Shown here: piece after piece, positions 25,300 through 50,306 of the stretch
Layout of the letters: every line of letters starts with the position of its first letter
Numbering within the stretch: the first letter of the stretch is position 1
Assembly: GCA_037447605.1 (NCBI GenBank)
Contig: CM074804.1
Span: 8,595,909 to 8,659,908, forward strand
DNA: 64,000 nucleotides
From: Zygnema circumcarinatum SAG 698-1b
Lineage: Eukaryota > Plantae > Zygnematophyceae
Reading direction: 5' to 3'
Notes under the pieces: generated by a model
Database searches by the model: none
What the model saw: the letters and a program-made list of their open reading frames with translations, nothing else
What the model was told of the DNA's origin: nothing
Made by a program: the position numbers and the translations under genes

Positions 25300-27848
25300 T
25301 CAGTTGGTGCCAACCTGACGGCGCCACGAGTCTTCGATGATGAGCTCTTCCAGCGACCAGTCTTCATAACTGGACAAACGAGAAGTGCGCAGCTGATTCA
25401 GGCCCTAAAGCATACGCAATGGTTGCAGAAAACAAGTCAAATGCACTCTCGTGTTTTACGCAGTTTTAAGTTTCTTCTGTTAAAAAAAACACAACACGAA
25501 AACATTGTACGACTGTCCCTGGCAGTGCAATGAAACGCTTAGAAGTCGACTGCTGTCCAAGACGGGATGATGCTGCAATTAGCTTTGTGGATCAATGGTG
25601 AAAAAATGACCTGTACTCAAAACATCAAATTCTCAAGCAACAAAAGATGCTGGATCCATACAACATACATCCGCGGAAAGCTGCTTACTGCAGTCTCTCC
25701 GCAAGCCTCACCTGCCATCTGGAAGATATCTCCTGATCGTAAACGGAATCTTCTTCTCCCGCAGTTCTTTCATTGCAATCTGCAAAGTAGAAACTCATTG
25801 CAAACATCCGTCCGCATTACCAAAAGAATGCCGCGAAACAAGCACGCGCGCGATACCTATTTAAGGCGATCAACTGGGAGGACTATCCAAATCAACAAAC
25901 CGAGCGACCAAAGTACCGACATGCATATACACCAGTTAATGCTCCACCAACTAATAGAACCTTGTCAATTTAGCATATGAAATAGGAGCATGCTCTACAG
26001 TAATATGCATTGGCACCGTCAACACAACCTTGTATCTCCGTAGTGAACGCTAGGGAAGAGAGAGTGAAAATGAACATGGTATGTAGCTGTGTCTCTAGGT
26101 CTCTAAAACAAAAACAGTAGAAGCAAATCAAAGAGGTTTAAGTCCAGTCTTGCGAATTTCAAAGTGCGTATCATGCAACACTAAAGTTAATCTACCATCT
26201 GCTCCAACATGACTTCTGAAGCAGACAACTTCAAAGACTGTTCACCAACAAGGCTACAGGCCGTTCACTATTACAACAGTCCATTCCAACACAAAAAAAT
26301 TCAACATCTTTCAACATATTCATGAAAGGAAGACCTTTCTGCATGCGCACATGACAAGAAAAGACTTCCTTCGGTTGCCTTAAAAAACTGACCTCCAAAG
26401 GATCCGTCTCTCCTGCAAGCTCCACCATGACTGGCGCGTTCATGCTGGCAATCCGCCGACAAAGAACGACTTATGAGAGCCTCCAGTTGTTTCTTATACG
26501 CAAAGCAAGCAAGCTATGGGGCGGTTCAACGACCCAAAGAAAGGCTATTCACTGCTTCCAAGAGAGCTTCCCTTCGTAGGAGAGGCAGACACAATGAAGT
26601 GCCTGGAAACAGGCTCCAATACCTCTTCTACTTAGAAAGAGTCGCTCAATTGTACATAAACATACGTAATCTGACAGCCTATTATCAACATCATGCTTCG
26701 GTTAGATAAAGCCAACATGTGCCACTAAAATCATCTAGAAACCCATCGTCTGGCAAATGACATTCTGTGACAAACAAGAACTCGAGTGCATCCCATCCTC
26801 GACAAAACCTGATCAACTTTGATCAACAAGTTTTCAAGTCTTCTGAAGTTAATTTAAGAAGATATGATCCTCGCTGCCTTCCTTATTCCTCACAAAAATA
26901 GAAATGCCAGCATTTGTAAGCCGACCTTATTTGAAGAGCTCTTGTGCCCAGCACCCGCGCTCTTTCGTACTTAGTCATGAACTTGGTTGTTTTTCGCGGT
27001 CTATTCGTCAGTTGTTCGGGCTCACTGTCCCTTATCTCGAGACCATCCGCGGGCACCCCGCCTGCATCTTCTTCCTTCTCTTCCTCTGCCTCCTCTTCCT
27101 AGTGAGACCGAAACCAGCCGACAACCCACAAGAATTTAATCACTTGTTTCCATGAGACAGGCCTTCGCGAAGGGCGGCTTGCCATGTTAATTGGCAATAA
27201 ACCAAAAGCCTCGGGGCCTTTCAGCATTCATCACACGTTCTCACGGACTGTTATATCTTTCTGATAATTACTTTTTCCCATCATCAATGTAACTTCCTAT
27301 CCCACTTGCGCTATCGTAATGAGCAGACACCTTCCCTGTGTCTGTCTTACAACTTAAGCATCTACCTTTAGCTCCGAATATAGAAACAAGAGTGTGAAAC
27401 TTTGCAATCCTGCATAATTGGAGAGTTTGCCAATCGCCTTTACATGGTGTAAGAATGATATGCATGATCCAAAGAAGTAAAGAAGCAGCATGTAAAAAAA
27501 AGGGGACGGGAGAAGGGGAACAACTAAGTATGAAAGCATCGCTACAAAAAAAGAAATTCCAAATTATAAGTTAGCTTCAACTTATTCCTCCAGAGATTCG
27601 ACCCTCATTCAGGTAATCCTGCAACGGCCTTGAGAGTCTGCGCAAGAGAGCGAGGAGAGAAGCGCGGAGCCAGACCTCCAATTCCGGAGCTTCGGGCTCG
27701 TCTTCGTACCTGCGCGGAGCCACGCGGGGGGGGGTGGCAGGGAGTCAGCAGACAGCGCGCCGCACGGGCAGGAGGGCAACAGGGCAGCAGGGCCGGCGCG
27801 CTCTCACCCGCCGTCCCCGCCGTAGTCGTCACCCTCCTCGTCCGCCAT
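25300..27848 (-). CDS. RPB6: RNA polymerase I/II/III common subunit RPB6 (RPABC2)
   Basis: Exons: MADEEGDDYGGDG (from 27848); EEEAEEE...[26 protein letters not shown] (~27098-26926); MNAPVMVELAGETDPLE (~26444-26393); [23 protein letters not shown] (~25779-25712); YEDWSLEELIIEDSWRRQVGTN* (stop 25302-25300). A short phase-linking second exon was not located. Confidence 0.95.
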
Positions 27849-28131
27849 GGCCGCCCGCCCGCTCGCCGCTGCCGCCGCTGCCGCCGCTTCCCTCGCTCCC
27901 TCTCCCTCTCTCTCCCTCCCTCCCTCCCTCCCTCCCTCTCCCAGCGACGCGCTCGCGCTCGCGCTCGCGCTTCTCGACGAGAGGCGAAACGGGTGACGGG
28001 TCACTTCAGCCCGCGCGTCGCTGCGCGTTCAAAAAGGTCCCCCCGGCGGGCGGGCGGGCGGCCGGCGGGCAGAGGCAGGCAGGCCGCAGGCAGCGGAGGG
28101 AGGCAGGGAGGGAGAGAGGGGTCGAGGGAGG

Positions 28132-31100
28132 ATGGCGGGTTCCGCAGTGCCCCTCTCTGCGCCTCCGCCGGGGCGCTCCTGCGACAAAGGCTCGCAGACT
28201 GAGCTCGGTGCGCAGGGACTGGAGTATTTCTCTGGCGGTGCTGGAGGCTGGCAGGCTCACAGAGGCGTGCGGCACTTTGCAGATCATGACGAGAGCTGCG
28301 AGGCGAGCCCGCTGCACGGTCAGCAGAGCACTCTTGAAAAAGGCAGCGACCTCGACTTACTCTGACACCGAATCCGTTAAATTGTGGTATTGGAATGTGG
28401 ACGATGTAGCGTGTACTTTCGAAATTCGGATTATCTGCTAGTGACTGCCGCTTAACCAAAGCTTCTTTTGTGGAGTGAATTTCAAGAATCACATCAAATA
28501 AACCAGATAATAATTGTTGTAAACCATGCTCTGTCCGCGCGACCATGTGCGAGCTCTATTCGTAAATTGCTCCGTATTCTGCATGCTTCATGCAGGATGG
28601 AATGCAGATAACGGAGCAGAATTGCAGCAAGAGCGAATAAGGTGCTGTACATCATCCGCGGGTCAAAAGATGAGATAGAGTCACCTTGTCTTCCAGTAAA
28701 TAACTTCTATGGCATGCGAGGCTGCTCCACTTGTGCACTCAGAATATCATGCCAGTGCACTTTTGACTGCCACATATCAGACCCTCGGTCATTGTGCGAC
28801 TTGGTTAGCATGATGAAAGTATCAGAGGACATTTCTAAGGCGCCTGCTTCTGCTTACTCCGAGTTATTACGCACAAGAGCATCCACTACATGTGGCGCTG
28901 CGGCCAATCTTGTTAGAGAAAGTGACTGCAAAAATCTACGCTGAAACCACTGTCTTCATTGTTAGAGTGGCTTGCTTTGTACTGAAAGCCGACTCTATGA
29001 ACAGTTACTTTGAATATCAATAGGACACTCCCAGTAGTTTTTTGATAAGGGCAAGTAATGATGAAGCACAGTTCTTGTTCATTTTTCAGGAGTGGAAGCA
29101 AAGCTGAGGTGCTGACACCTGTTGTCACTCTTTTCAACAACAAATGGAAGTCTACCAACCTATCGATCATGGACCTTCAATGCCACCCCTTACAAGCCGA
29201 CTTGATAGTGGCCTGTTACTGGAATCCAGCTGTGGCTTCCCTAGACTGTGGCTCGTTTTCTTACTCAAACTCCAAAGGCTGGGTCACCTCCTCTGGCAAA
29301 TCTCCAGGAAGCAGCCTTTTTAATCAGACGCATAGTTCCCTCTCCCCCGACACTATTGATTCTTCCCAGTCGCAGACGTCACGTACAGAAGAAAACACTG
29401 ATCCTGCAGTCGTCGTGTGGTCTACGCAAGGTCAACAGGTTTCAATCTTGCAGAGCGAACATCGAGTAACGTCGCTGGCCTGGGACCCTGCAAACATTCA
29501 CGTTCTTTCTGGAGGCACACAACTGGGACAAATCCTCATTTGGGACACACGGGCAGGAAGGTGTGCGATTCAAAAAAGTAAACTGATATCAGCTAGGTGG
29601 CAGGGACACCTGGACATGGTCAACAACCTCACTATGGTTGACGAAGGAGAGTCAGGAAAGCTAGTGAGTACATGTAAAGCTGGTCGATTATGCACCTGGA
29701 CCCGACGCATGCTTGATAAGGTGTTTGTCCTCTCCCTGCCTTCCACACTGCCCAGCGGTGAACGTCAAAAACAAAAGATAGAAGCCTCTGTCGATAACAT
29801 TTTCGGATTTATGAATGTCATTGAAAGTGGTAACCGACTGCTTAGTAGTTCTTTGCGGCTCGCAAGTTAAGGGCTTAAAGCAATACATATGCCGGTGCAA
29901 CTTGATAGGGAAAGTACCGTTTTGCCGTTCGTGGTTTCATTAGTAGTGTCTCCTTAGCGCTGGCCAACAGGTCTGTTTAGTTGCCACGTTACCGCCAGAG
30001 CAACAAAAAGCTTTTGAAATAGGATGTGGCCCATTTTCCAGACTTATCCTACGCTGGACATTAGAATTGCAATACTGACGGGGAGAACAAGACTGATTTT
30101 TTATCCTGACCGCGAATGCAGCCTCTGACCAAATTGGAATTGCGACAGCCCGGGAGTTCAGAGGATTCGATAAACCTGGTCACTCAGTGGAATGTCGTCC
30201 CGACATGCTTATCCTTTGCGCATGGGGACAGGAACACGTTCTTTTTGGGAACTGAATCTGGCCAGCTGTACCAGGTATACTGTAGTTTTACTTATCATTG
30301 TTGTGGCATAAGGCTACAAGTAGACGTGATGGAATAGTTGAACAAAGCTCCTTGCGTTTGTTTGTCAATTGACGTGACTTTACTTTTCTTGAGAGTTTGG
30401 GTTGATACATAGAAAGCGGGTGAACATGATAACTAAGTGAACCGCCGATTGCTATGTGGATAACAGTCAGTCTCCATTCCTTTCAGATTTCTCAGGAGAA
30501 GGGGCAATGTGTGAGGATGGCAACGCACAGGAATATGTTGGTGTGGAGGAAATGGAGATTATCACGATTTAAAATGATTCTCAGTGCTTCTTGATTTGAC
30601 AGGGTACCCTGAATGGTAGTCCGGAAGCAGACCTTCCTGGTCTCTTCCGTCAGATTGGCCCACAATCGGACCAGCGACGGGTGCGCCGGTGGAGCGGTGA
30701 GGGGTTCATGAGGAGCTCACGGCACTTGGCGAACAGGCGACCTTCTGGTAGCTCCTCACCAATCGCACAGAGGGACTCCCACTTAAGTTCCTCGTGTACT
30801 TGTCCTCATCCTTCCTTTTGTTGGATGTATCAGCCACTCCGTACTGCTTTTCCTTTGCACACTCGTCAAAGTTATTGTACCTTCTCCCAATGAGTTTTTA
30901 AGCACTTGACAGCTTTTTTTTTTCTTCCTTTACTTTCATTTCCCTGTCATCAGTTATTGCACGTCTCTCTGCTGTCCATCTTCAGCAATAGCCAGAATGC
31001 ATTGCCTTCACCTCGCCAAGCTGTCAACTTCCTATCTATGCCTCCTCCTCGTCTCTTCTTTCAATAAGCGCTTCGCACTAGGATTGGTGGTCTCTGGCTG

Positions 31101-32143
31101 TTAAGCCTCATCCATGGCTACTGCGCACATTTTTATGGTACAATATGGGGGGGAAGTTGATGGTTACGTACCTTTTGATAAATTATCAACTGTCCTTTTC
31201 TGTTTCGTGCGCATCTTTAGTTTGCTTATTCCTTTTGCTGCATCGCACCCTTTCGAGCAGGTGCCGAAGCCCACCGGGGCCTCATCAGCGGCCTCCACTG
31301 CCACCCGGGCACACAGCAAGTGGAGGGCTTGCCTGACGTTGCTGACCTTATGCTGACGTCATCATGGGACTGGACTTTCAAGTTGTGGAGTGCGCATAAC
31401 CCGTCCAGGTGAGATGCATCTATGGATTTTGTCCAAGTATTTTGAACTTTCTGTCCATTCTTGTTTCTCGTTTGTCCTTGTTTGCTGTTCATTTGTTCTT
31501 CCAGTCTCATTTTTTTTTTCTTTTTAGCTTTGCATAGTTGCAGCCCCAGGCTGCTTCATAACCAGTGACTTCGTTCCTTTCCCTGAAAGCCGGTAAAGAT
31601 GAAAGGAAGATATGAAGCATTTAGAAGTCGGGTGAACTCCAACCACTGTTCTGTCGACACGCGAGGCAATGCCCGCCTAAAATCTTTTGAAGCAGCTGCG
31701 CTTTTGTGTTTGTAATGTTGTTTGTGGCGGGGTATTGATTTCTCTTTTTTGCCATTCACAGGCCATTGTGGAGCGTGGAGTATTTGAATGCATGTCATGA
31801 CGTGCAGTGGTCGCCGAGAGATCCCTTTGCGTTTGCGGTGCTTTCGGCGGATGACAACCGAGTGCAACTGTGGCACCTCGGGGCGAGTCTGAACGGACCG
31901 GTCGGGGCGCTGCCGCTGCGGCCCACCACCACTACTACTCACCGCGGCGCTGACGCCTCCTCTGCGGGCGGCGGCCGGCTGCGGTGGACCTCGGACGGCC
32001 GCCAGATCGTCTGCGCCGACCTGCGAGGGCGCATCCACGTGGTGGGGGCGGAGGCGGCGCAGGAGGCCTTCGGCGAGCTGCCGTCCGATGCGCTCGAGGC
32101 GGTCTGGGAGAAGGTGGAGGAGCTGAGGACGCGCAGCCGCTGA
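28132..32143 (+). CDS. Dynein intermediate chain-like WD40 protein, most similar in motifs to cytoplasmic dynein-1 IC (DYNC1I/Pac11/NudI type)
   Basis: Exons 29090-29720, 30122-30274, from 30603, 31261-31408 and 31762-32143 encode LFNNKWKSTNLSIMDLQCHPLQADLIVACY, GGTQLGQILIWDTR, GHLDMVNNLTMV...LVSTCKAGRLCTWTRRMLDKP, PTCLSFAHGDRNTFFLGTESGQLY, HRGLISGLHCHPG...DLMLTSSWDWTFKLW, DVQWSPRDPFAFA and RLRWTSDGRQIVCADLRGRIHV. These are collinear with the DYNC1I propeller. The N-terminal exon (ATG 28132) has KGSQTE. Exons between 28350 and 29090 are unresolved. Confidence 0.75.
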
Positions 32144-33341
32144 CTCTGACTCTGCCTCTTCTTCCCCCCCCCCTCCCTCTGCCTGTCCTTGTGCCATCGC
32201 ACGTGCTGGACAAGTCATTTGAAACGCAACGTACCATACTCTCATTCGGTATTTGCGTGCGATGATGCTCTATGCGGTGGGGTGGGGCCGTGCAATAATT
32301 TTGCATCCAAATGTTCTGTTTCGAGTAACTGACAGAGCTTAAAGTAGGCAGTTTGATATCCAGCATGACGGAAAAAAGCGCAAGTTTGAGCACACCCACC
32401 CTGCCATTCAGCCTCACATCGCTTTCGAGTTCAGTCCATGCTGAACGAACGAACACAAATGCTCCGAGGAACGATTCTTTCATGTATTCCAATAAATTTA
32501 ACAAATGAGAACGAGTCTACAGATCAGACAGAGGCATTTTAGGTGGAAGGATGAGCAAGTGCCTGCCAGTCAACCGCTGTGGCCCCGCTGTGGCCCCTCC
32601 GGATATGGAGGTGAAAGGCAAGCACACAGGTCCTCCCGAAGCAGATGGGTCAAATAACACTGCCTTGCCTAACGCAGCTGGTCCAGAGGGTTGCTACTTT
32701 TCACATACCTCATTACCATCAAAGCTAAAAGTTCACCTACCGCGGACCCGCCCACGCCTGACATCTCCAAGTAAGCGTTGTTCCACCACCAGACCTAACT
32801 ACGATTGATTGAACCTGACAGCTGATGACTCTAGTGATGTCAATATCTACAACTCAACAGCCTCTGTGTTTTTCTTTACAAATGCCATCAAGACCCGTCA
32901 CTGCTCTCTGGACCTCGCAGCCGGCCGTCTAAACAGCTGCAGATAAATAATGGGGCCATGTGCTCCAATATTCGTGTAGACAGGAGGAGCTCCTCGCAAA
33001 CAGACCAAACTTTTCTCCAAAAACTCTCCATTGTTGGCGCCATGCTGTGTCCACAGGCCTCACTGACCCCGGAAACCGATGCTTCCCGAAGACACCTACA
33101 GCAACCGATTTATTGACATTCTACAGATTTCCGAATGAAACTCTGCACAAACTTCGCTTGTTTGAGCCTCATCTCAGTTGCAGGACAGGCTGCCAGCGGC
33201 CTCCTGAGAAGTTTTGTGCATTGGTTGACGGCAACGCATTTGTCAACGCAAGCAGCAGGGTGCTCTGCATGACTCTTCCAGTTGTCAATTCGATCATATA
33301 ATTCCATCGGTCGATCGCCTCAAGATCCCTAACGCGGCTTC

Positions 33342-35719
33342 CTATACATCCGTGCGAGGGTATTTTACGTATTCCCCACCCATCAGCTGAAGGACCTCTT
33401 CCCAAAGTTTATCGTGGGGTGTCTTCAAAAGTATACCAGGACTGCACGCTGCAATCTGCCACCATCCTGACCTGACTTCTTTCTGCAGCTGCATGGAATC
33501 CCAGCCTGCATATCCGAAAAAGAAACGGAAATCTTCTGGCCTGGCTTCATGAGTATTTACTGCGGACACTGCTGCTTCCATGGACGACATGCTGCCACAG
33601 TACGTTCCCGGTAGAACCTCATCAGAACCGTTAACGTTTCCAACATTATGAAGCAAAATAAAACGACGAGTATCCAGAGGACCTCCCACGTTGACCGGGC
33701 ATGATCCAAAGGTCTTCATCAAGCTATGGCTCATCCCCTTCATCGTGCCGATTCTGTGGCTCAAGGGCTTGTTCAGCACCACTCCATATGGTGCCTCTTC
33801 ATCCTCATGACTAAGCATGAGAATAACAGATTTTTCGAAAAACGCATACCCATTTAGCTGCTCTGTAGCTACGAGAATACAGCCTCGCTCAAGTTTAGGA
33901 ACCACATGAGCCCATTCTCTGCCTTCCCTCCCCCTGGATGAGACAGTCCACGCACCGAAATCAAATCTACTCTTTCCGTACTCATTGTCCTCGAACCCTC
34001 GAGACTCTCCTGCTCTACTCTCAGCTTGCTGTTCCATGTCGACAAGCTGCGCACGAAAGGTTCGCCAATCCATGTCGCGAGGGGTTGAAGACGAGAACGC
34101 TGGATGAAACAAAGACTGCTCTCTCTGAAACGACTCCATATCATCATCTTCAGGGGCAGGCAGCCCGTCCTTTGCACCCCCATTGCCTCGTCCAGAACTG
34201 CATATTATACTCCAACTTCTGCCTGCACATCAGAGGAACACAATAAGCAAAATCAGAATAACCGGCCAAGACTTCGCTTTTATAGCACGCGTACGTGCTT
34301 GTCCATAATAAACCTCGTCGACGTGATTCTTCTTCAGTGTGATTTACAGGCACCTACGAAGAAATCTTCTCACGCCCCAGCAATCTTCACATTAGAAAGC
34401 CATGTTGCATTCCCGGATCCCAAACATGCTTCCCCAACCCTTGCCGTGGAGAACGCGTGCAGCAAAGCATTTATAATTCTATGGCTTCAAAGCACATTTC
34501 AGAAATTCAAAATCCAGAACCGTTCTGATGCTTGTTTCCCTTGAGAAACATCATAAGTGCGTCCTGAGTAGCGATTGCTACATGAGATCATCTTGAAGCA
34601 ATGATCAAATCCAACAATCCGCACTTTGAAATTGATGAGCTCACCGATTCCTGAGCTAACATCTGATCTGTGTCAGATGATTGAAGTGTAAAGACATCCA
34701 ATGAAACAAATAAAAATTAAAAACAATGACGGGATCAATTGCATTCGGTGGGCCTCTGCAACGCCATCATTCACTGGTGCCGGTGTCAATTTCAATACAA
34801 TGCTATTCACCGGAAGTTCTGCACTACAGTCTCAACAGACTATTAACAGGGGCAAACTTCCTCAAAAGGAAAAACTTTATTAGATTGCTTCTTCTGAACA
34901 AAAAAAAAGAGAGTTCAAAATGAAACCTCAGAAAAGATGCGTCCCCATCTTTTGTTTCCGTTTCTTTTCCATCCCGCAGTAAGACAAGTTGGCCTTCTTT
35001 CCCATAAGCAATGTTCTAAAAGGCTTTTATGGCGGTATGCTTTTGGACCGAAGTTCCGACAGTCAGAAACTTTAGTAAACTATTTCAATCTCACTCAACT
35101 GCTAGCCGGTCCACATTCCGGCAAGGCAAATTTTGCAAGCTCAAAAGCTGTCATTTTGACAGCCATCTGGAAACCTGCATAACACTGTAAATCAATGCTT
35201 GCCGTAAGCAATCATGGCGTTTCCTAACTGTAGCGGCAACGTCTCCATAGCACACTCGTTCATCACGAAGCTCAAAAGGAAGCTGCAACGTTAGCAGCAT
35301 CAGGTCAAGTATCATAAGCGTGAACATCCATAGCGTCCTTTCATGGAATTGTATCAACTTCAAAAAAAAAAAAAAAAACCGACTTCCTTTCAAGCAGAAG
35401 AGACAAAAATAGCTAAAACTCCCCTTACCGATCTCCTCGCAGCCGCAGGCACCGACACAAGCATTTCATCTAGAGCAAGCCAAGGGCCGCACGTGCTACT
35501 GAGAAGCAGCAGAAAAGCACCTTTACGAGGCGCTCCAATATCTTTTCCAGAAAATGAAGGATAAAATGCCTTGGCTGACAGCAGCGTCCTCGAGGCGGAG
35601 TGCTCTTTACAGGCCCCCTCCGCGGGCGCCGCCACTCTGCAAGCGGCGCGCAGCCCTTGCGCATGCGTTCCCGAGGTGAGAGAGAAGGCAGGTGCTCCGG
35701 CGGCGACAGCAGCAGCCAT
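33342..35719 (-). CDS. DUF179/UPF0301 (AlgH/YqgE-like) protein with probable plastid transit peptide
   Basis: Main exon (~34225-33342) has the plant-type DWRTFRAQLV motif plus LERGCILVAT, FEKSVILML, GVVLNKP, GGPL, FFFGYAGWDSMQLQKEV and LWEEVLQLMGGEY. An upstream Ala/Ser/Arg-rich exon starts at agccATGg 35719; a short exon lies at ~34353-34314. The 3' end may include a further small exon. Confidence 0.85.
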
Positions 35720-46921: not shown

Positions 46922-49900
46922 ATGGCGTCTTCCCCCCTTCTCCAGTCTCTGACTGACGTCTCCCCCGCCATGGTCGACTTTCTTGATAGACATTTTGCTT
47001 CTGCTGAAGACCTGTCATCTTCTTCTTCCATATTGGGACACTTAGAAGCTGAGCGGCAAGGGATGCTCGAGCAACAGGCGGTGCTTCGCTCGTCTTTAGC
47101 AGGCTTGGCATCCATGGCTGCCAGCCGAGTAAATGCAGAGGCGGAGTCTCTTCAGCGGCTGGCGCAGCACGTGCATGCGGCTCAGTGCCGGGCGGACGCC
47201 GCAGGGGCAGAGATGACGGCTACGGTGGAGGAGCTCGCAGAGCTGGCGGAGGAGGTGACCCGAATTGAGAGGACGAGGGCTTACATGGAGGCGCTCCTAG
47301 TGCTTGAAAGTCAGGTAGCAGATTTGGAGGATGCTGTCGCTGCAGCTACAAAGGTAGCACTTGCTCCTTTCACCATTCACTCAATGCTGTTTGCGAGCGA
47401 GTCCTATACGGATGACTTATGTAGAGGAAGGCATTTCGTCGATGTTACTTTGAGTGGAAAGTGCTTTTTTGCTGATGGAATGGAAGAAGGGGTTACAGTG
47501 TGAAGGAGTTCTTCATTTCGTTTCTATGCAACCTCACCAGTGGTTGAATGATGTGGAAGATGTTTCCATTCATCTTTACATCACTCAGTTCGCATTCAGG
47601 CACAAATGGCTGCCAGGGTAAACGTAAAAGAAACAGAAATGTAAACGTTCTCACAGTGTTCTGAGGAAGGCAGCATCACATGCCATCACATGTAGGGGGC
47701 TTGCGGCTCCTATTATGGTAGTCTTTTTAAATGATTATGGATGCACTAAGAACTCATGGACTTCCATTTCTGCTCTCACAGTGCCAGCTGGATCACGTAT
47801 TTTCCTATGATGCATTGCCTCTCTTGCTTCAGTTGTAAATTCACTTGCATTTGGAGTGCTTCCTTTGGTCCATGGAATTTCCCAAGTGTGGGATTCTTTC
47901 TGCTATTTCTAACAGGCTCTTTGCTCCGCTGTTCAGAGAGAAGGGATTTCACCGGGAGCCCTCATCGCAGCTGCCACTGCCTTTCAAACCGTCGCAAACA
48001 CCTTGGCTGCTATGGCTGACACTCGATCGCACTGGAAACATATGAGGGAAGCAGCTGACATTCGCCTTGACCGTGCTGCTGCTGTTCTGCATCCTCTTGC
48101 ACTGGGTGCTTATAGAACTTGTCTAAGAGATATAGGATGGCCACTTCCACTCTCAAGTGCAAGTGGACCTTCCCAGAGCTCGCCATATAGCAAACATGAA
48201 GAGCAAAGTAAAAATGATCCTATTCTCAGGCTTCATGGGGAAACGAAAGGTCGCTTCGAGAATCTTTTTGCCTCCTTATCAATCGTGCAAGTGGTAGAAA
48301 AACTGCGGCGAAATCGACAGGAACTCGTCCACCGACGCGTAAGGGCTCCAGAACAAGCGAACTGGCAGAGGCAAAGTCAAAGTAGATGGAATAGCGAAAG
48401 GTTGTCAGAGTCGGAGGTGCTCTGGTCTATGGAAGAGCTTGTTGCCCCTATCGCTCGGCGTGCAGAGCCGCATTTGGTCAGGTGGCTGGAAAGACCTGAA
48501 TTGGTCTTTGCTCTTGTATTTCGCGTGGCTCGCAGTCATGTGGAGATAATGGATGTTGCATTGCAGCCAGTTCTGGACAGTGCCAGCCTTGTGGGTATCA
48601 GCGCACGTGAAGAATGGGTCAAGGCCGTGGTTGCCATTGCGACTGCACACCTAAAGGACAGGCTTCTGCCGTGGCTTGCTCAGCAGACGAAGGGAGAGCA
48701 ATCTCAAGATCTGAATTCTTCTCTTTTGTTGGACGCCGTTGACCAAGCACTAGATTTCGACGTGCAAATGCGGAGCCTGGCTATGGGGACTCCTGTGGCT
48801 TCGAGTCGAGCGCTTGAGGGGCCGTTGCCAGACACTGTTGGTGTAAATATAGGTTCCGCGTTAGATGTTTTTGCTCTTCAATCAGTTTGGCTGGAGTTGT
48901 GGACTCGCTTAGAGCTAGAAGATGCTCAGCAGAAGCTTCGGGAGGAGTTGCAACGAGAAAGTGCATGGACACAAGTCGATTCGACGGCTGCAACTCTAGA
49001 ATTTTTGGAAGGAGGGCGAGAAATGAGTGCTGCTATTGACTCTGGTGGTGCCATGGAAACTGAGCTACGACCGATGCCAGGAGCGGAAGCGTTATTTAGA
49101 ATAATGTGGGCAGCAGTATATAGATGTCGGGCACTGCGGATTAGTAAACATCGACTGGCGTTCGTTAGAGCAGTTGTCGCTCCTTTAGCTACGCAGTACA
49201 GAGAGGCTCTTCTCAATCGTGTTCAAGAAGTGGAAGCTTCGACAGCCTTAGCAGATACGACTGCCATGATGAAGGTAGCAGCGTGCGCCAGCTCTGCACA
49301 TTACTGTCAATTTACATTGCAGCAATGGAGTGATGAGGCCTTCTTTATAGAATTGAAGAGGGTTGCAGAAGAAACCGACTCTACAGCCAATGGCTGGGAG
49401 GAGCTGCAAGTTGATCCTGACGAGGGTATTGGAGGGGATTTTAGTGATGCAAACACGCAGAGAACACCTTTCTCTAGCAAAGGAAGCGGTGTTGACTCGT
49501 CTGGGAGTAGCTTGACCGGTGCTGGAATAGAAGGGTCGGTCTTTGATGCGGAAATTGATGGGTTTGTGAGGTCCCAGACAGAGTGGACAGGAAGGATTCT
49601 CACAGCTCTTTTGCGTGGTTTTGATTCGAGGTGCACCGAGTATGTCAGGAATAGGAAAAAGTGGCAGGAGGGTACAGTTCAAGACGATAGTAGTCGATCG
49701 AGTTCCAGTGACGCGGTGCGCAGCCCCGCGAAGGATGTCAGGAGGAAGGAAAGCGAAGGATGGGCGCGTCAGCTACTAGGTGGACTTCAGCTCAGGCCGA
49801 TTTTTTTTTATGAAGTTGAAGGGCAAGATGTCTCTGGGAGCTTCATAGAGCCCTTGTCTGTACTGCGGTCGCAATTGGATGTCCTTCAGAGGGCCCTAGA

Positions 49901-50306
49901 CTCGGATCTCTTTGCTGGACTCTGGCGGAGGTTGGCAGCAGCCCTTGATGAGAACCTCATGGAAAGTGTGGTCTTAGGGGGAGCAAAGTTTTCAGACGCG
50001 GGAGCGAGGCAGTTTGCTGTGGACATGTCGGCAGTGTTCTCCTTGTTCCGCGGCTACACCGCCCGGCCCATCAACTTTTTCCGAAGCCTGCGCGACTCGC
50101 TGGCGGTGCTGCTCATGGCACCCTCCGAGGCATCGGCGCTGCTGCTCATGCTCTCCATGGCCGGGACGGAGGCGGGCACTGGAGAGGGAGGGTCAGAGGC
50201 AGACAGCAAGCTGCTTCCTTTGTTGCAAAAGCGGAACATTCGCCGCATGGCGCCTGGAAGAGTGTTGGAAGTTTTGAACCAGCGTGTCGGAATAAAGCGG
50301 CCGTGA
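46922..50306 (+). CDS. RINT1: RINT1/TIP20 family ER tethering factor (MAG2-like)
   Basis: N-terminal coiled-coil exon, then a long exon with WSMEELVAPIARRAEPHLVRWLERPELVFALV, LLLDAVDQALDFD, SSAHYCQFTLQQWSDEAFFIEL and FSDAGARQFAVDMSAVFSLF...FFRSLRDSLAVL. Confidence 0.9.

What the first reader, a model, noticed from the sequence alone, without database searches (positions are those of the whole stretch)
28132..32143. Cytoplasmic dynein-1 intermediate chain-like gene in a green-plant-lineage genome
The propeller motifs follow DYNC1I/Pac11 rather than axonemal or IFT ICs: F-x-x-x-W at the propeller start, GG-T-x-x-GQI-x-x-WD, W-x-x-x-ML-x-x-P, SF-x-x-GD-x-N-x-F-x-x-G-x-E-x-G, and H-C-H-P...TSS-x-DWT-x-KLW. 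The N-terminus keeps K-G-S-Q-T-E, resembling the LC8-binding KxTQT motif, but is short and lacks an obvious dynactin-binding coiled coil. A ~50-aa Ser-rich loop is inserted in blade 1. Cytoplasmic dynein-1 heavy chain is regarded as lost from green plants while LC8 is retained (established). This could be an orphan IC repurposed with LC8, or a marker of an unrecognised dynein-1 remnant (inference).
Basis: partly seen in the sequence, partly recalled or inferred. Interest (0 to 1): 0.75.

Follow-up and report, generated by a model that had tools for sequence, protein, structure and literature searches.

The report
Dynein-1 intermediate chain in green alga

Summary

It is a cytoplasmic dynein-1 intermediate chain (DYNC1I/Pac11 type).
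- Four exons searched separately each hit human DYNC1I2 as the best dynein chain, collinear over residues 263-570.
- In a library of 1.84 billion proteins, all of about 40 intermediate-chain-like hits are dynein-1 chains.
- The best long match is Chara braunii GBG90375.1, an unnamed "hypothetical protein". It scores 162 bits against DYNC1I2, against 64 or less for axonemal and dynein-2 chains.

Window and Chara group at 99/97 support. All three Chara introns match window introns in position and phase. Balamuthia and Gonapodya genes share none of them.

Both green proteins keep a KxxQT-type LC8 site. Both lack the N-terminal helix that binds dynactin p150 and NudE.

Papers state that dynein-1 and dynactin are absent from Viridiplantae. 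This scan noted the same stretch before (s1-406456) and, on other DNA of this genome, a dynein-1-type heavy chain (s1-341344); I could not re-test that heavy chain.

Most likely this is the intermediate chain of a retained dynein-1 that lacks the intermediate-chain contact with dynactin.

The parts
28132..32143 (+). Whole coding span of the dynein-1-type intermediate chain gene (7 exons, 571 aa)
   Evidence: Spliced contigs, splice ends, open frame
28132..28342 (+). Exon 1: start codon and short N-terminus without the p150/NudE-binding helix
   Evidence: First in-frame ATG. RPB6 lies head-to-head 283 bp upstream.
28186..28203 (+). KGSQTE, candidate LC8-binding site (KxxQT[ED] type)
   Evidence: MAFFT places it in the column of KQTQTT, KTTQTD and KGVQTE of canonical chains. 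Chara has QQSQTS at aa 31-36.
28596..28641 (+). Exon 2, a 46-nt micro-exon
   Evidence: Joints on both sides, each with a 27-nt side. The frame is kept.
29090..29720 (+). Exon 3: blades 1-3 of the propeller, including GGTQLGQILIWD (29511-29546)
   Evidence: PDB: DYNC1I2 residues 263-390, 28.7 bits. Used as the query of the large search.
29229..29408 (+). Ser-rich 60-aa insert in the first blade
   Evidence: Chara has a 52-aa insert in the same loop, but the two sequences are not significantly alike.
30122..30274 (+). Exon 4: SFAHGDRNTFFLGTESG blade
   Evidence: PDB: DYNC1I2 residues 392-431. The same contig spans exons 3, 4 and 5.
30603..30747 (+). Exon 5: basic insert of about 45 aa that canonical chains lack
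   Evidence: Chara has a longer insert at the same site, not significantly alike in sequence.
31261..31408 (+). Exon 6: HCHP...TSSWDWTFKLW blade
   Evidence: PDB: DYNC1I2 residues 447-487, 34.5 bits, E 1.6e-7 for 48 aa
31762..32143 (+). Exon 7: last blades, C-terminal helix and stop codon
   Evidence: PDB: DYNC1I2 residues 490-570
28642..29089 (+). Intron 2 (phase 2, in an Arg codon); same position and phase as Chara intron 1
29721..30121 (+). Intron 3 (phase 0, after MLDK); same position and phase as Chara intron 2 (after MLGK)
30275..30602 (+). Intron 4 (phase 0, after LYQ); same position and phase as Chara intron 3 (after VYQ)

Best explanation
This is an intact, transcribed and correctly spliced gene for a divergent cytoplasmic dynein-1 intermediate chain (DYNC1I/Pac11 family). 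It was inherited vertically within streptophyte algae; its orthologue is Chara braunii CBR_g50623. Shown: the gene model, the class assignment, the Chara orthologue with shared introns, the kept KxxQT-type site and the missing N-terminal helix. Inferred: its WD40 propeller docks on the tail of the dynein-1-type heavy chain that earlier notes of this scan report in the same genome. Its N-terminal KGSQTE strand recruits an LC8 dimer that pairs two chains. Because the helix that contacts dynactin p150Glued and NudE is gone, and published surveys found no dynactin-specific subunits in plants, the complex would work without that contact. In short, it would be a reduced dynein-1 that lacks the intermediate-chain contact with dynactin.
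For: Gene model and expression: six splice joints in contigs of X1 and a 571-aa open frame. Class: exons 3, 4, 6 and 7 each give DYNC1I2 as the best dynein chain, collinear at 263-390, 392-431, 447-487 and 490-570. The window-plus-Chara profile scores 182.7 bits on DYNC1I2, against 70 for DNAI2, 61 for IC138 and 58 for WDR34. All of about 40 single-stretch intermediate-chain-like hits among 1.84e9 representatives score above 150 bits with a PF11540-positive chain, and those with names are cytoplasmic dynein chains. Orthology with Chara: highest identity 32%, clade support 99/97, and all three Chara introns shared in column and phase, none of them with Balamuthia or Gonapodya. Architecture: KGSQTE aligns with the KxxQT[ED] site, and the N-terminal helix motif is absent in the window and Chara but present in nearly all other full-length chains, including Diplonema. 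Context: a DHC1-type heavy chain is noted in this genome. Plants lack dynactin-specific subunits (PMC3583065).
Against: The heavy-chain partner rests only on earlier AI notes that I could not re-test. One of those notes calls the heavy-chain tail highly diverged. No LC8, Roadblock, LIC or LIS1 gene of this genome was seen. The protein is very divergent (end branch 2.56, about 30% identity to any chain) and has three loop inserts. No tree with the other intermediate-chain classes as outgroups could be built. Published surveys of Chara and Klebsormidium did not report a dynein-1 heavy chain (PMC9237703, PMC5100056, 10.1101/2023.11.22.568388). Three other runs of the same species label showed no contig on the locus.
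Confidence: 0.62

Rival explanations
1. It is an orphan intermediate chain. The dynein-1 motor no longer uses it, and the protein survives as an LC8-bound WD40 scaffold with some other job.
For: The partner-binding N-terminal helix is lost. The Roadblock-binding region is not recognisably kept. The protein is highly divergent, with long branches. LC8 is known to persist in organisms without dynein (PMC9237703). The literature finds no dynein-1 heavy chain in green algae.
Against: Earlier notes report an intact, expressed DHC1-type heavy chain in the same genome. The propeller motifs that mark dynein-1 chains are kept across two streptophyte lineages that are only 32% identical to each other.
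Confidence: 0.17
2. It is really the intermediate chain of another dynein (outer arm, I1 inner arm or IFT dynein-2), and its likeness to DYNC1I is an artefact of divergence.
For: No outgroup-rooted tree was possible. Exon 3 alone scores DNAI2 at 27.3 bits, close to DYNC1I2 at 28.7. Streptophyte algae with flagellate cells do have axonemal and IFT dyneins.
Against: Exons 4, 6 and 7 prefer DYNC1I2 clearly. The Chara orthologue scores 162 bits on DYNC1I2 against 64 or less on other classes. The profile scores 183 against 70 or less. No axonemal or dynein-2 chain appears among the best 150 of 1.84e9 representatives. The three nearest Atlas structure clusters for the Chara protein are DYNC1I clusters.
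Confidence: 0.06
3. It is a decaying relic: transcribed but no longer functional, on its way to loss.
For: It has the longest branch in the tree and an odd residue make-up. Contigs also cover introns 1 and 2. No close relative was found in protein or metagenome collections.
Against: The 571-codon frame is intact across six introns, all with canonical ends. Family motifs are kept in every blade. An orthologue is retained in Chara.
Confidence: 0.1
4. It is a contaminant, or a recent transfer from a non-green eukaryote.
For: Past 'plant dyneins' turned out to be fungal or algal contaminants (PMC9237703).
Against: The gene lies inside a 64-kb contig between RPB6 and a DUF179 gene whose nearest clusters are Streptophyta and Chlorophyta. 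Seven runs from three studies hold the locus. With Chara left out, the window protein sits on the unresolved backbone and not inside any sampled clade. Its introns are shared with Chara only.
Confidence: 0.03

Closest known systems
Human cytoplasmic dynein 1 intermediate chain 2 (DYNC1I2; PDB 6F1T, 7Z8F, 9DGR)
   Same: The C-terminal WD40 propeller is collinear over DYNC1I2 residues 263-570. The family motifs match: GGTxxGQIxxWD, SSxDWTxKLW, DVxWSP and RxRWxxxGR. A KxxQT site lies N-terminal to the propeller.
   Different: The N-terminal helix that binds p150Glued and NudE is absent. Pfam PF11540 gives no match. The Roadblock-binding segment is not recognisable. There are three loop inserts: blade 1, the exon-5 loop and the last blade. 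Identity is only about 30%.
Chara braunii hypothetical protein CBR_g50623 (GBG90375.1, 638 aa)
   Same: It is the nearest long relative, at 32% identity. It is the sister in the tree at 99/97 support. Three introns are shared in position and phase. It has the same short N-terminus with an SQT motif and no coiled coil. It has inserts in the same three loops.
   Different: The window gene has three more introns. The insert sequences are unrelated by a shuffle test. The Chara protein is less diverged from canonical chains: 211 bits against P0071, where the window protein scores 137.
Dynein-1 intermediate chains of protists and fungi (Balamuthia KAL6078661.1, Saprolegnia XP_008615585.1, Phytophthora KAG7382903.1, Gonapodya P0159; yeast Pac11 from memory)
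   Same: Same family: 100-137 bits with the joined model inside a script.
   Different: Where full length, they keep the N-terminal [AE]ELExK[RK][RK]KLEE helix. Balamuthia and Gonapodya share four old intron positions with each other and none with the green pair.
Dynein-2 and axonemal intermediate chains (WDR34/DYNC2I2, WDR60, DNAI1, DNAI2, IC138/DNAI4, IC140/DNAI3)
   Same: General dynein intermediate-chain propeller with a DWTxKxW-like blade.
   Different: They score far lower: at most 70 bits with the green profile, against 183 for DYNC1I2.

Membership tests
Cytoplasmic dynein-1 intermediate chain (DYNC1I/Pac11) | C-terminal WD40 propeller collinear with DYNC1I and carrying its blade motifs | tested here: met
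   Exons 3, 4, 6 and 7 match DYNC1I2 at 263-390, 392-431, 447-487 and 490-570, in order. The motifs are seen in alignment. The fold of the joined protein was not modelled.
Cytoplasmic dynein-1 intermediate chain (DYNC1I/Pac11) | Closer to DYNC1I than to any other dynein intermediate-chain class | tested here: met
   The profile scores 182.7 bits on DYNC1I2, against 70 (DNAI2), 61 (IC138) and 58 (WDR34). The Chara orthologue scores 161.8 against 64 or less. All intermediate-chain-like hits in 1.84e9 representatives are dynein-1 type. This is a score ranking, not an outgroup-rooted tree.
Cytoplasmic dynein-1 intermediate chain (DYNC1I/Pac11) | N-terminal helix or coiled coil that binds dynactin p150Glued and NudE | tested here: not met
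   The motif is absent in the window and in Chara, and present in nearly all other full-length chains. An upstream coding exon is unlikely.
Cytoplasmic dynein-1 intermediate chain (DYNC1I/Pac11) | LC8 (and Tctex) binding strand, KxTQT type; Pfam PF11540 | tested here: inconclusive
   KGSQTE aligns with the KxxQT[ED] column, but PF11540 gives no match on exon 1.
Cytoplasmic dynein-1 intermediate chain (DYNC1I/Pac11) | Roadblock/LC7-binding helices before the propeller | tested here: inconclusive
   The aligned segment (aa 40-70) shows no clear conservation with the canonical ...EF..F......ERAL block.
Cytoplasmic dynein-1 intermediate chain (DYNC1I/Pac11) | Co-occurrence and assembly with a dynein-1 heavy chain (DHC1) | not testable with these tools
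   Only earlier scan notes report a DHC1-type gene in this genome. The rest of the genome cannot be searched from this window.
Dynein-2 intermediate chains (WDR34, WDR60) | Best sequence match to WDR34/WDR60 | tested here: not met
   WDR34 scores 58 bits and WDR60 at most 14 bits, against 183 for DYNC1I2.
Axonemal intermediate chains (DNAI1/2, IC138, IC140) | Best sequence match to an axonemal chain | tested here: not met
   DNAI2 scores 70, IC138 61 and DNAI1 47.5 bits with the profile. Only exon 3 alone comes close, at 27.3 against 28.7 bits.

The most novel reading that the evidence does not exclude
Streptophyte algae, at least this alga and Chara, have kept a working cytoplasmic dynein-1 since before the origin of Viridiplantae. 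Its intermediate chain has shed the dynactin/NudE-binding helix, making it a naturally minimal dynein-1 that lacks the intermediate-chain contact with dynactin. This would overturn the textbook statement that the green lineage lost this motor at its root.
Probability: 0.45. Interest if true: 0.82.

Novelty: new variant of a known kind. Interest (0 to 1): 0.66.

Why it matters
Three surveys read here state that cytoplasmic dynein-1 and dynactin are absent from Viridiplantae (PMC5100056, PMC3583065, PMC9237703). A review links that absence to how plant spindles and centrosome loss evolved (PMC13443282).

An expressed dynein-1-type intermediate chain is a second, independent subunit that points to a surviving dynein-1. 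It has an orthologue in Chara with shared introns, and it lies in a genome where the scan also noted a dynein-1-type heavy chain. If that holds, the loss would fall later in green evolution than the root of Viridiplantae, after streptophyte algae had branched off.

It would also offer a natural test of what dynein-1 can do without the intermediate-chain link to dynactin and NudE.

It gives a concrete, clonable handle (tagging, pull-down, knock-out) for a question that has been argued only from gene absence.

Tried and rejected
- **Word searches.** The search with the 273-aa open frame around exon 3 found nothing. That tool's length limit shuts out full-length relatives. Repeating it with the Chara protein and with a Chara-plus-exons profile gave only Chara itself and generic dynein-1 chains. 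Neither the window's own protein nor any close relative is in that collection.
- **Metagenome scan.** The scan with exon 3 gave no relative above 34% identity.
- **Pfam.** Scans of the exons gave only sub-threshold WD40-type matches.
- **Shared inserts.** I tested whether the three loop inserts and the N-termini of the window and Chara proteins are alike in sequence. They are not (1163, 1282 and 1894 of 2000 shuffles reach the observed scores). Only their positions coincide, and other lineages also have inserts in the blade-1 loop. I dropped this as evidence of orthology.
- **P0033.** A metagenome protein that looked like a second divergent relative is an ordinary dynein-1 chain of an intron-poor protist.
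- **P0139.** It seemed to share the short N-terminus but is probably a truncated gene model, because a 752-aa member sits in its cluster.
- **Other runs.** Runs X8-X10 of the same species label laid no contig on the locus. This is not proof of silence.
- **Exact look-up.** The neighbouring DUF179 protein is not on record, so the organism could not be named that way.
- **Telomere-like repeat.** A literature search for TTTTTAGGG did not identify the organism.
- **Earlier notes.** Words for dynactin, LIS1, LC8 and light chain met no note on dynein partners: the first three met no finding and 'light chain' returned only two unrelated notes.
- **Complex prediction.** Not run, because neither LC8 nor the heavy chain of this genome is available as a session sequence.
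- The joined 571-aa protein has no reference, so it was not sent to any search, fold or complex tool. It was used only inside scripts. No outgroup sequences (DNAI1/2, WDR34/60, IC138/140) could be obtained, so the rooted tree was not built.
Full report
**1. What is there**

The stretch holds a split eukaryotic gene, so open reading frames alone give only fragments.

Seven public runs from three studies, all of one coded organism, hold 75-88% of the sampled words of window 28000-32300.

Contigs of run X1 laid on the stretch carry six joints that skip 253-513 bases. One 933-base contig runs through exons 3, 4 and 5.

I shifted each joint within its stated ambiguity. This gives one GC-AG intron (28343-28595) and five GT-AG introns: 28642-29089, 29721-30121, 30275-30602, 30748-31260 and 31409-31761.

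The seven exons are 28132-28342, 28596-28641, 29090-29720, 30122-30274, 30603-30747, 31261-31408 and 31762-32143. Read together inside a script, they give an unbroken 1716-nt frame of 571 aa.

So the gene is transcribed and correctly spliced. Other contigs also lie over introns. These may be unspliced RNA or carried-over DNA, and I draw nothing from depth.

**2. The N-terminus is really short**

The first in-frame start codon after the upstream stop is the ATG at 28132.

An RNA polymerase RPB6 gene lies head-to-head. It has a Pfam PF01192 match in the exon at 26886-27056 on the minus strand. Its start codon at 27848 is followed by an acidic MADEEGDD... exon and a GTGAG donor.

Only 283 bp separate the two start codons. 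The 5'-most contig begins at 28027, and no loose end was reported. An upstream coding exon is therefore unlikely.

**3. Which intermediate chain**

Against all PDB chains, human DYNC1I2 is the best dynein chain for each exon that scores, and the matched ranges run in order.

| Exon | Bits against DYNC1I2 | DYNC1I2 residues |
|---|---|---|
| 3 | 28.7 | 263-390 |
| 4 | 14.9 | 392-431 |
| 6 | 34.5 | 447-487 |
| 7 | 21.9 | 490-570 |

Other classes reach at most:
- DNAI2: 27.3 bits, on exon 3 only.
- DNAI4: 17.3 bits.
- IC138: 15.1 bits.
- WDR60: 14 bits.

The word search found nothing, which is expected given its length limit. The family scans left the protein open. I therefore ran the one large search, with exon 3.

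Most top hits were many-repeat WD40 proteins that match one blade repeatedly. About 40 hits matched a long single stretch instead.
- All of these score above 150 bits with a PF11540-positive dynein-1 chain.
- Those that carry names are cytoplasmic dynein chains of Balamuthia, Saprolegnia, Phytophthora, Plasmodiophora, insects, yeasts, a chytrid, a gregarine and Diplonema.
- No axonemal or dynein-2 chain was among them.

No hit exceeded about 37% identity. Neither the window's own protein nor a close relative is in the collections searched.

**4. The Chara orthologue**

The best long hit is Chara braunii GBG90375.1, "hypothetical protein CBR_g50623", 638 aa.

| PDB chain class | Chara protein alone, bits | Chara plus window exons 3, 6, 7 as a profile, bits |
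|---|---|---|
| DYNC1I2 | 161.8 (E 2e-46) | 182.7 |
| DNAI2 | 64 | 70 |
| IC138 | 45 | 61 |
| WDR34 | 57 | 58 |
| IC140 | 34 | not listed |

The three nearest Atlas structure clusters for the Chara protein are also DYNC1I clusters.

I built a careful maximum-likelihood tree of 32 dynein-1 chains, using the joined model only inside the script. The window and Chara proteins are sisters with support 99/97.

Both are long branches, so I checked two ways.
- **Leave-one-out.** With either one left out, the other attaches to the unresolved backbone and not inside any sampled clade.
- **Gene structure.** The Chara gene (BFEA01000807.1) has three introns: phase 2 in Arg84, phase 0 after ...MLGK, and phase 0 after ...VYQ. 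All three fall in the same alignment column, with the same phase, as window introns 2, 3 and 4 (Arg86 phase 2; after ...MLDK; after ...LYQ).

The Balamuthia and Gonapodya genes share four intron columns with each other but none with the green pair. Intron positions do not suffer from long-branch attraction. I take the orthology and the vertical descent within streptophytes as well supported.

The loop inserts that the two proteins have at the same three sites are not alike in sequence. I do not count them as evidence.

**5. Is the locus really green?**

- The gene sits in the middle of a 64-kb contig.
- A neighbouring AlgH/DUF179 gene is nearest to Atlas clusters dominated by Streptophyta and Chlorophyta.
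- The only green relative found for the gene is Chara.
- Earlier notes of this scan treat the genome as a streptophyte alga.

I could not name the organism.

**6. Architecture and likely mechanism**

Nearly all full-length dynein-1 chains in the set begin with a helix of the type [AE]ELExK[RK][RK]KLEE, even that of Diplonema. The window and Chara proteins lack it. In canonical chains this region binds dynactin p150Glued (PMC3583065) and, from my own knowledge, NudE.

KGSQTE (aa 19-24) is placed by MAFFT in the column of KQTQTT, KTTQTD and KGVQTE, the LC8-binding strand of canonical chains. Chara has QQSQTS at aa 31-36. Pfam PF11540 does not match. No LC8 sequence was available, so binding is inferred and not shown.

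The Roadblock-binding block is not recognisable.

My reading follows; the steps are inferred.
- The propeller binds the tail of a dynein-1-type heavy chain.
- An LC8 dimer clamps two N-terminal strands together.
- The dynactin and NudE contact is gone.

This matches the published absence of dynactin-specific subunits in plants.

**7. What is known**

- Kollmar 2016 states that DHC1 was lost at the origin of Viridiplantae (PMC5100056).
- Lucas and Geisler 2022 surveyed Chara and Klebsormidium. They confirm there is no true cytoplasmic dynein 1 in Chlamydomonas and land plants, and they report none for the charophytes (PMC9237703).
- A 2026 review links centrosome loss to the lack of dynein-1 (PMC13443282).

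I found no paper on a dynein-1 intermediate chain in charophytes.

Within this scan, the same stretch was noted before in another window (s1-406456). A DHC1-type heavy chain was reported on another piece of this genome: it has a dead AAA3 site and a diverged tail (s1-341344, s1-341349, s1-341374). I could not re-test those notes. They are what tips me towards a subunit of a surviving dynein-1 over an orphan chain.

**8. Limits**

- The joined 571-aa protein has no reference. It was not sent to any search, fold or complex tool, and it was used only in scripts (phmmer against fetched proteins, alignments, trees).
- No sequences of the other intermediate-chain classes could be fetched. The class call therefore rests on score rankings against PDB and on the make-up of the database hits, not on a rooted tree.
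- The rest of the genome could not be searched for the heavy chain, LIC, light chains, LIS1 or dynactin.

**9. Verdict**

This is a new, N-terminally reduced variant of a known protein family, found in a lineage where the family is held to be absent, with a second member lying unannotated in Chara.

Interest is fairly high. Together with the heavy chain noted earlier, it makes the question "did the green lineage really lose cytoplasmic dynein-1?" directly testable.

Noticed in passing
window 26883-27848 (-): An RNA polymerase subunit RPB6 gene lies head-to-head with the intermediate-chain gene. It has a Pfam PF01192 match in one exon and an acidic MADEEGDD first exon. The two start codons are 283 bp apart, so the genes probably share a two-way promoter in a CT-rich, GC-rich spacer.
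   Followed up: partly
window 28613-29117; ATG at 29058: A contig runs unspliced across intron 2. Inside that intron, an ATG at 29058 is in frame with exon 3. Such transcripts could encode a protein lacking the first 86 aa, including the KGSQTE site.
   Followed up: no
window 33342-34139 (-): A single-exon AlgH/DUF179 (YqgE-like) gene of 265 aa. Its nearest Atlas clusters are dominated by Streptophyta and Chlorophyta. The exact protein is not on record in the assembly index.
   Followed up: partly
window 48003-50306 (+): A long open frame with a RINT-1/TIP-1 family match (E 1.7e-43), probably the MAG2-type ER tethering factor.
   Followed up: no
L009 (Balamuthia) and L010 (Gonapodya): The dynein-1 intermediate chain genes of an amoebozoan and a chytrid share four intron positions (alignment columns 339, 384, 477, 768). 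These are probably very old introns. None is kept in the two green genes.
   Followed up: partly
L001 3316-5542 (JGI metagenome 3300005826): A canonical dynein-1 intermediate chain of an intron-poor unknown protist, called as two overlapping genes. It has a long Ser/Ala-rich insert in the same blade-1 loop as the window protein, so this loop takes inserts repeatedly.
   Followed up: partly
L008 3001-19937 (Chara braunii BFEA01000807.1): The Chara orthologue spans 17 kb, with introns of about 5 and 9 kb, one of them with a GC donor. The locus holds 1137 N. The protein is annotated only as hypothetical.
   Followed up: partly
Atlas search of P0011: Among the nearest feature clusters of the Chara protein is an unnamed WD40 cluster of 52 members (613 aa) dominated by Chlorophyta. 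It could be an axonemal chain or a chlorophyte relative of this gene.
   Followed up: no
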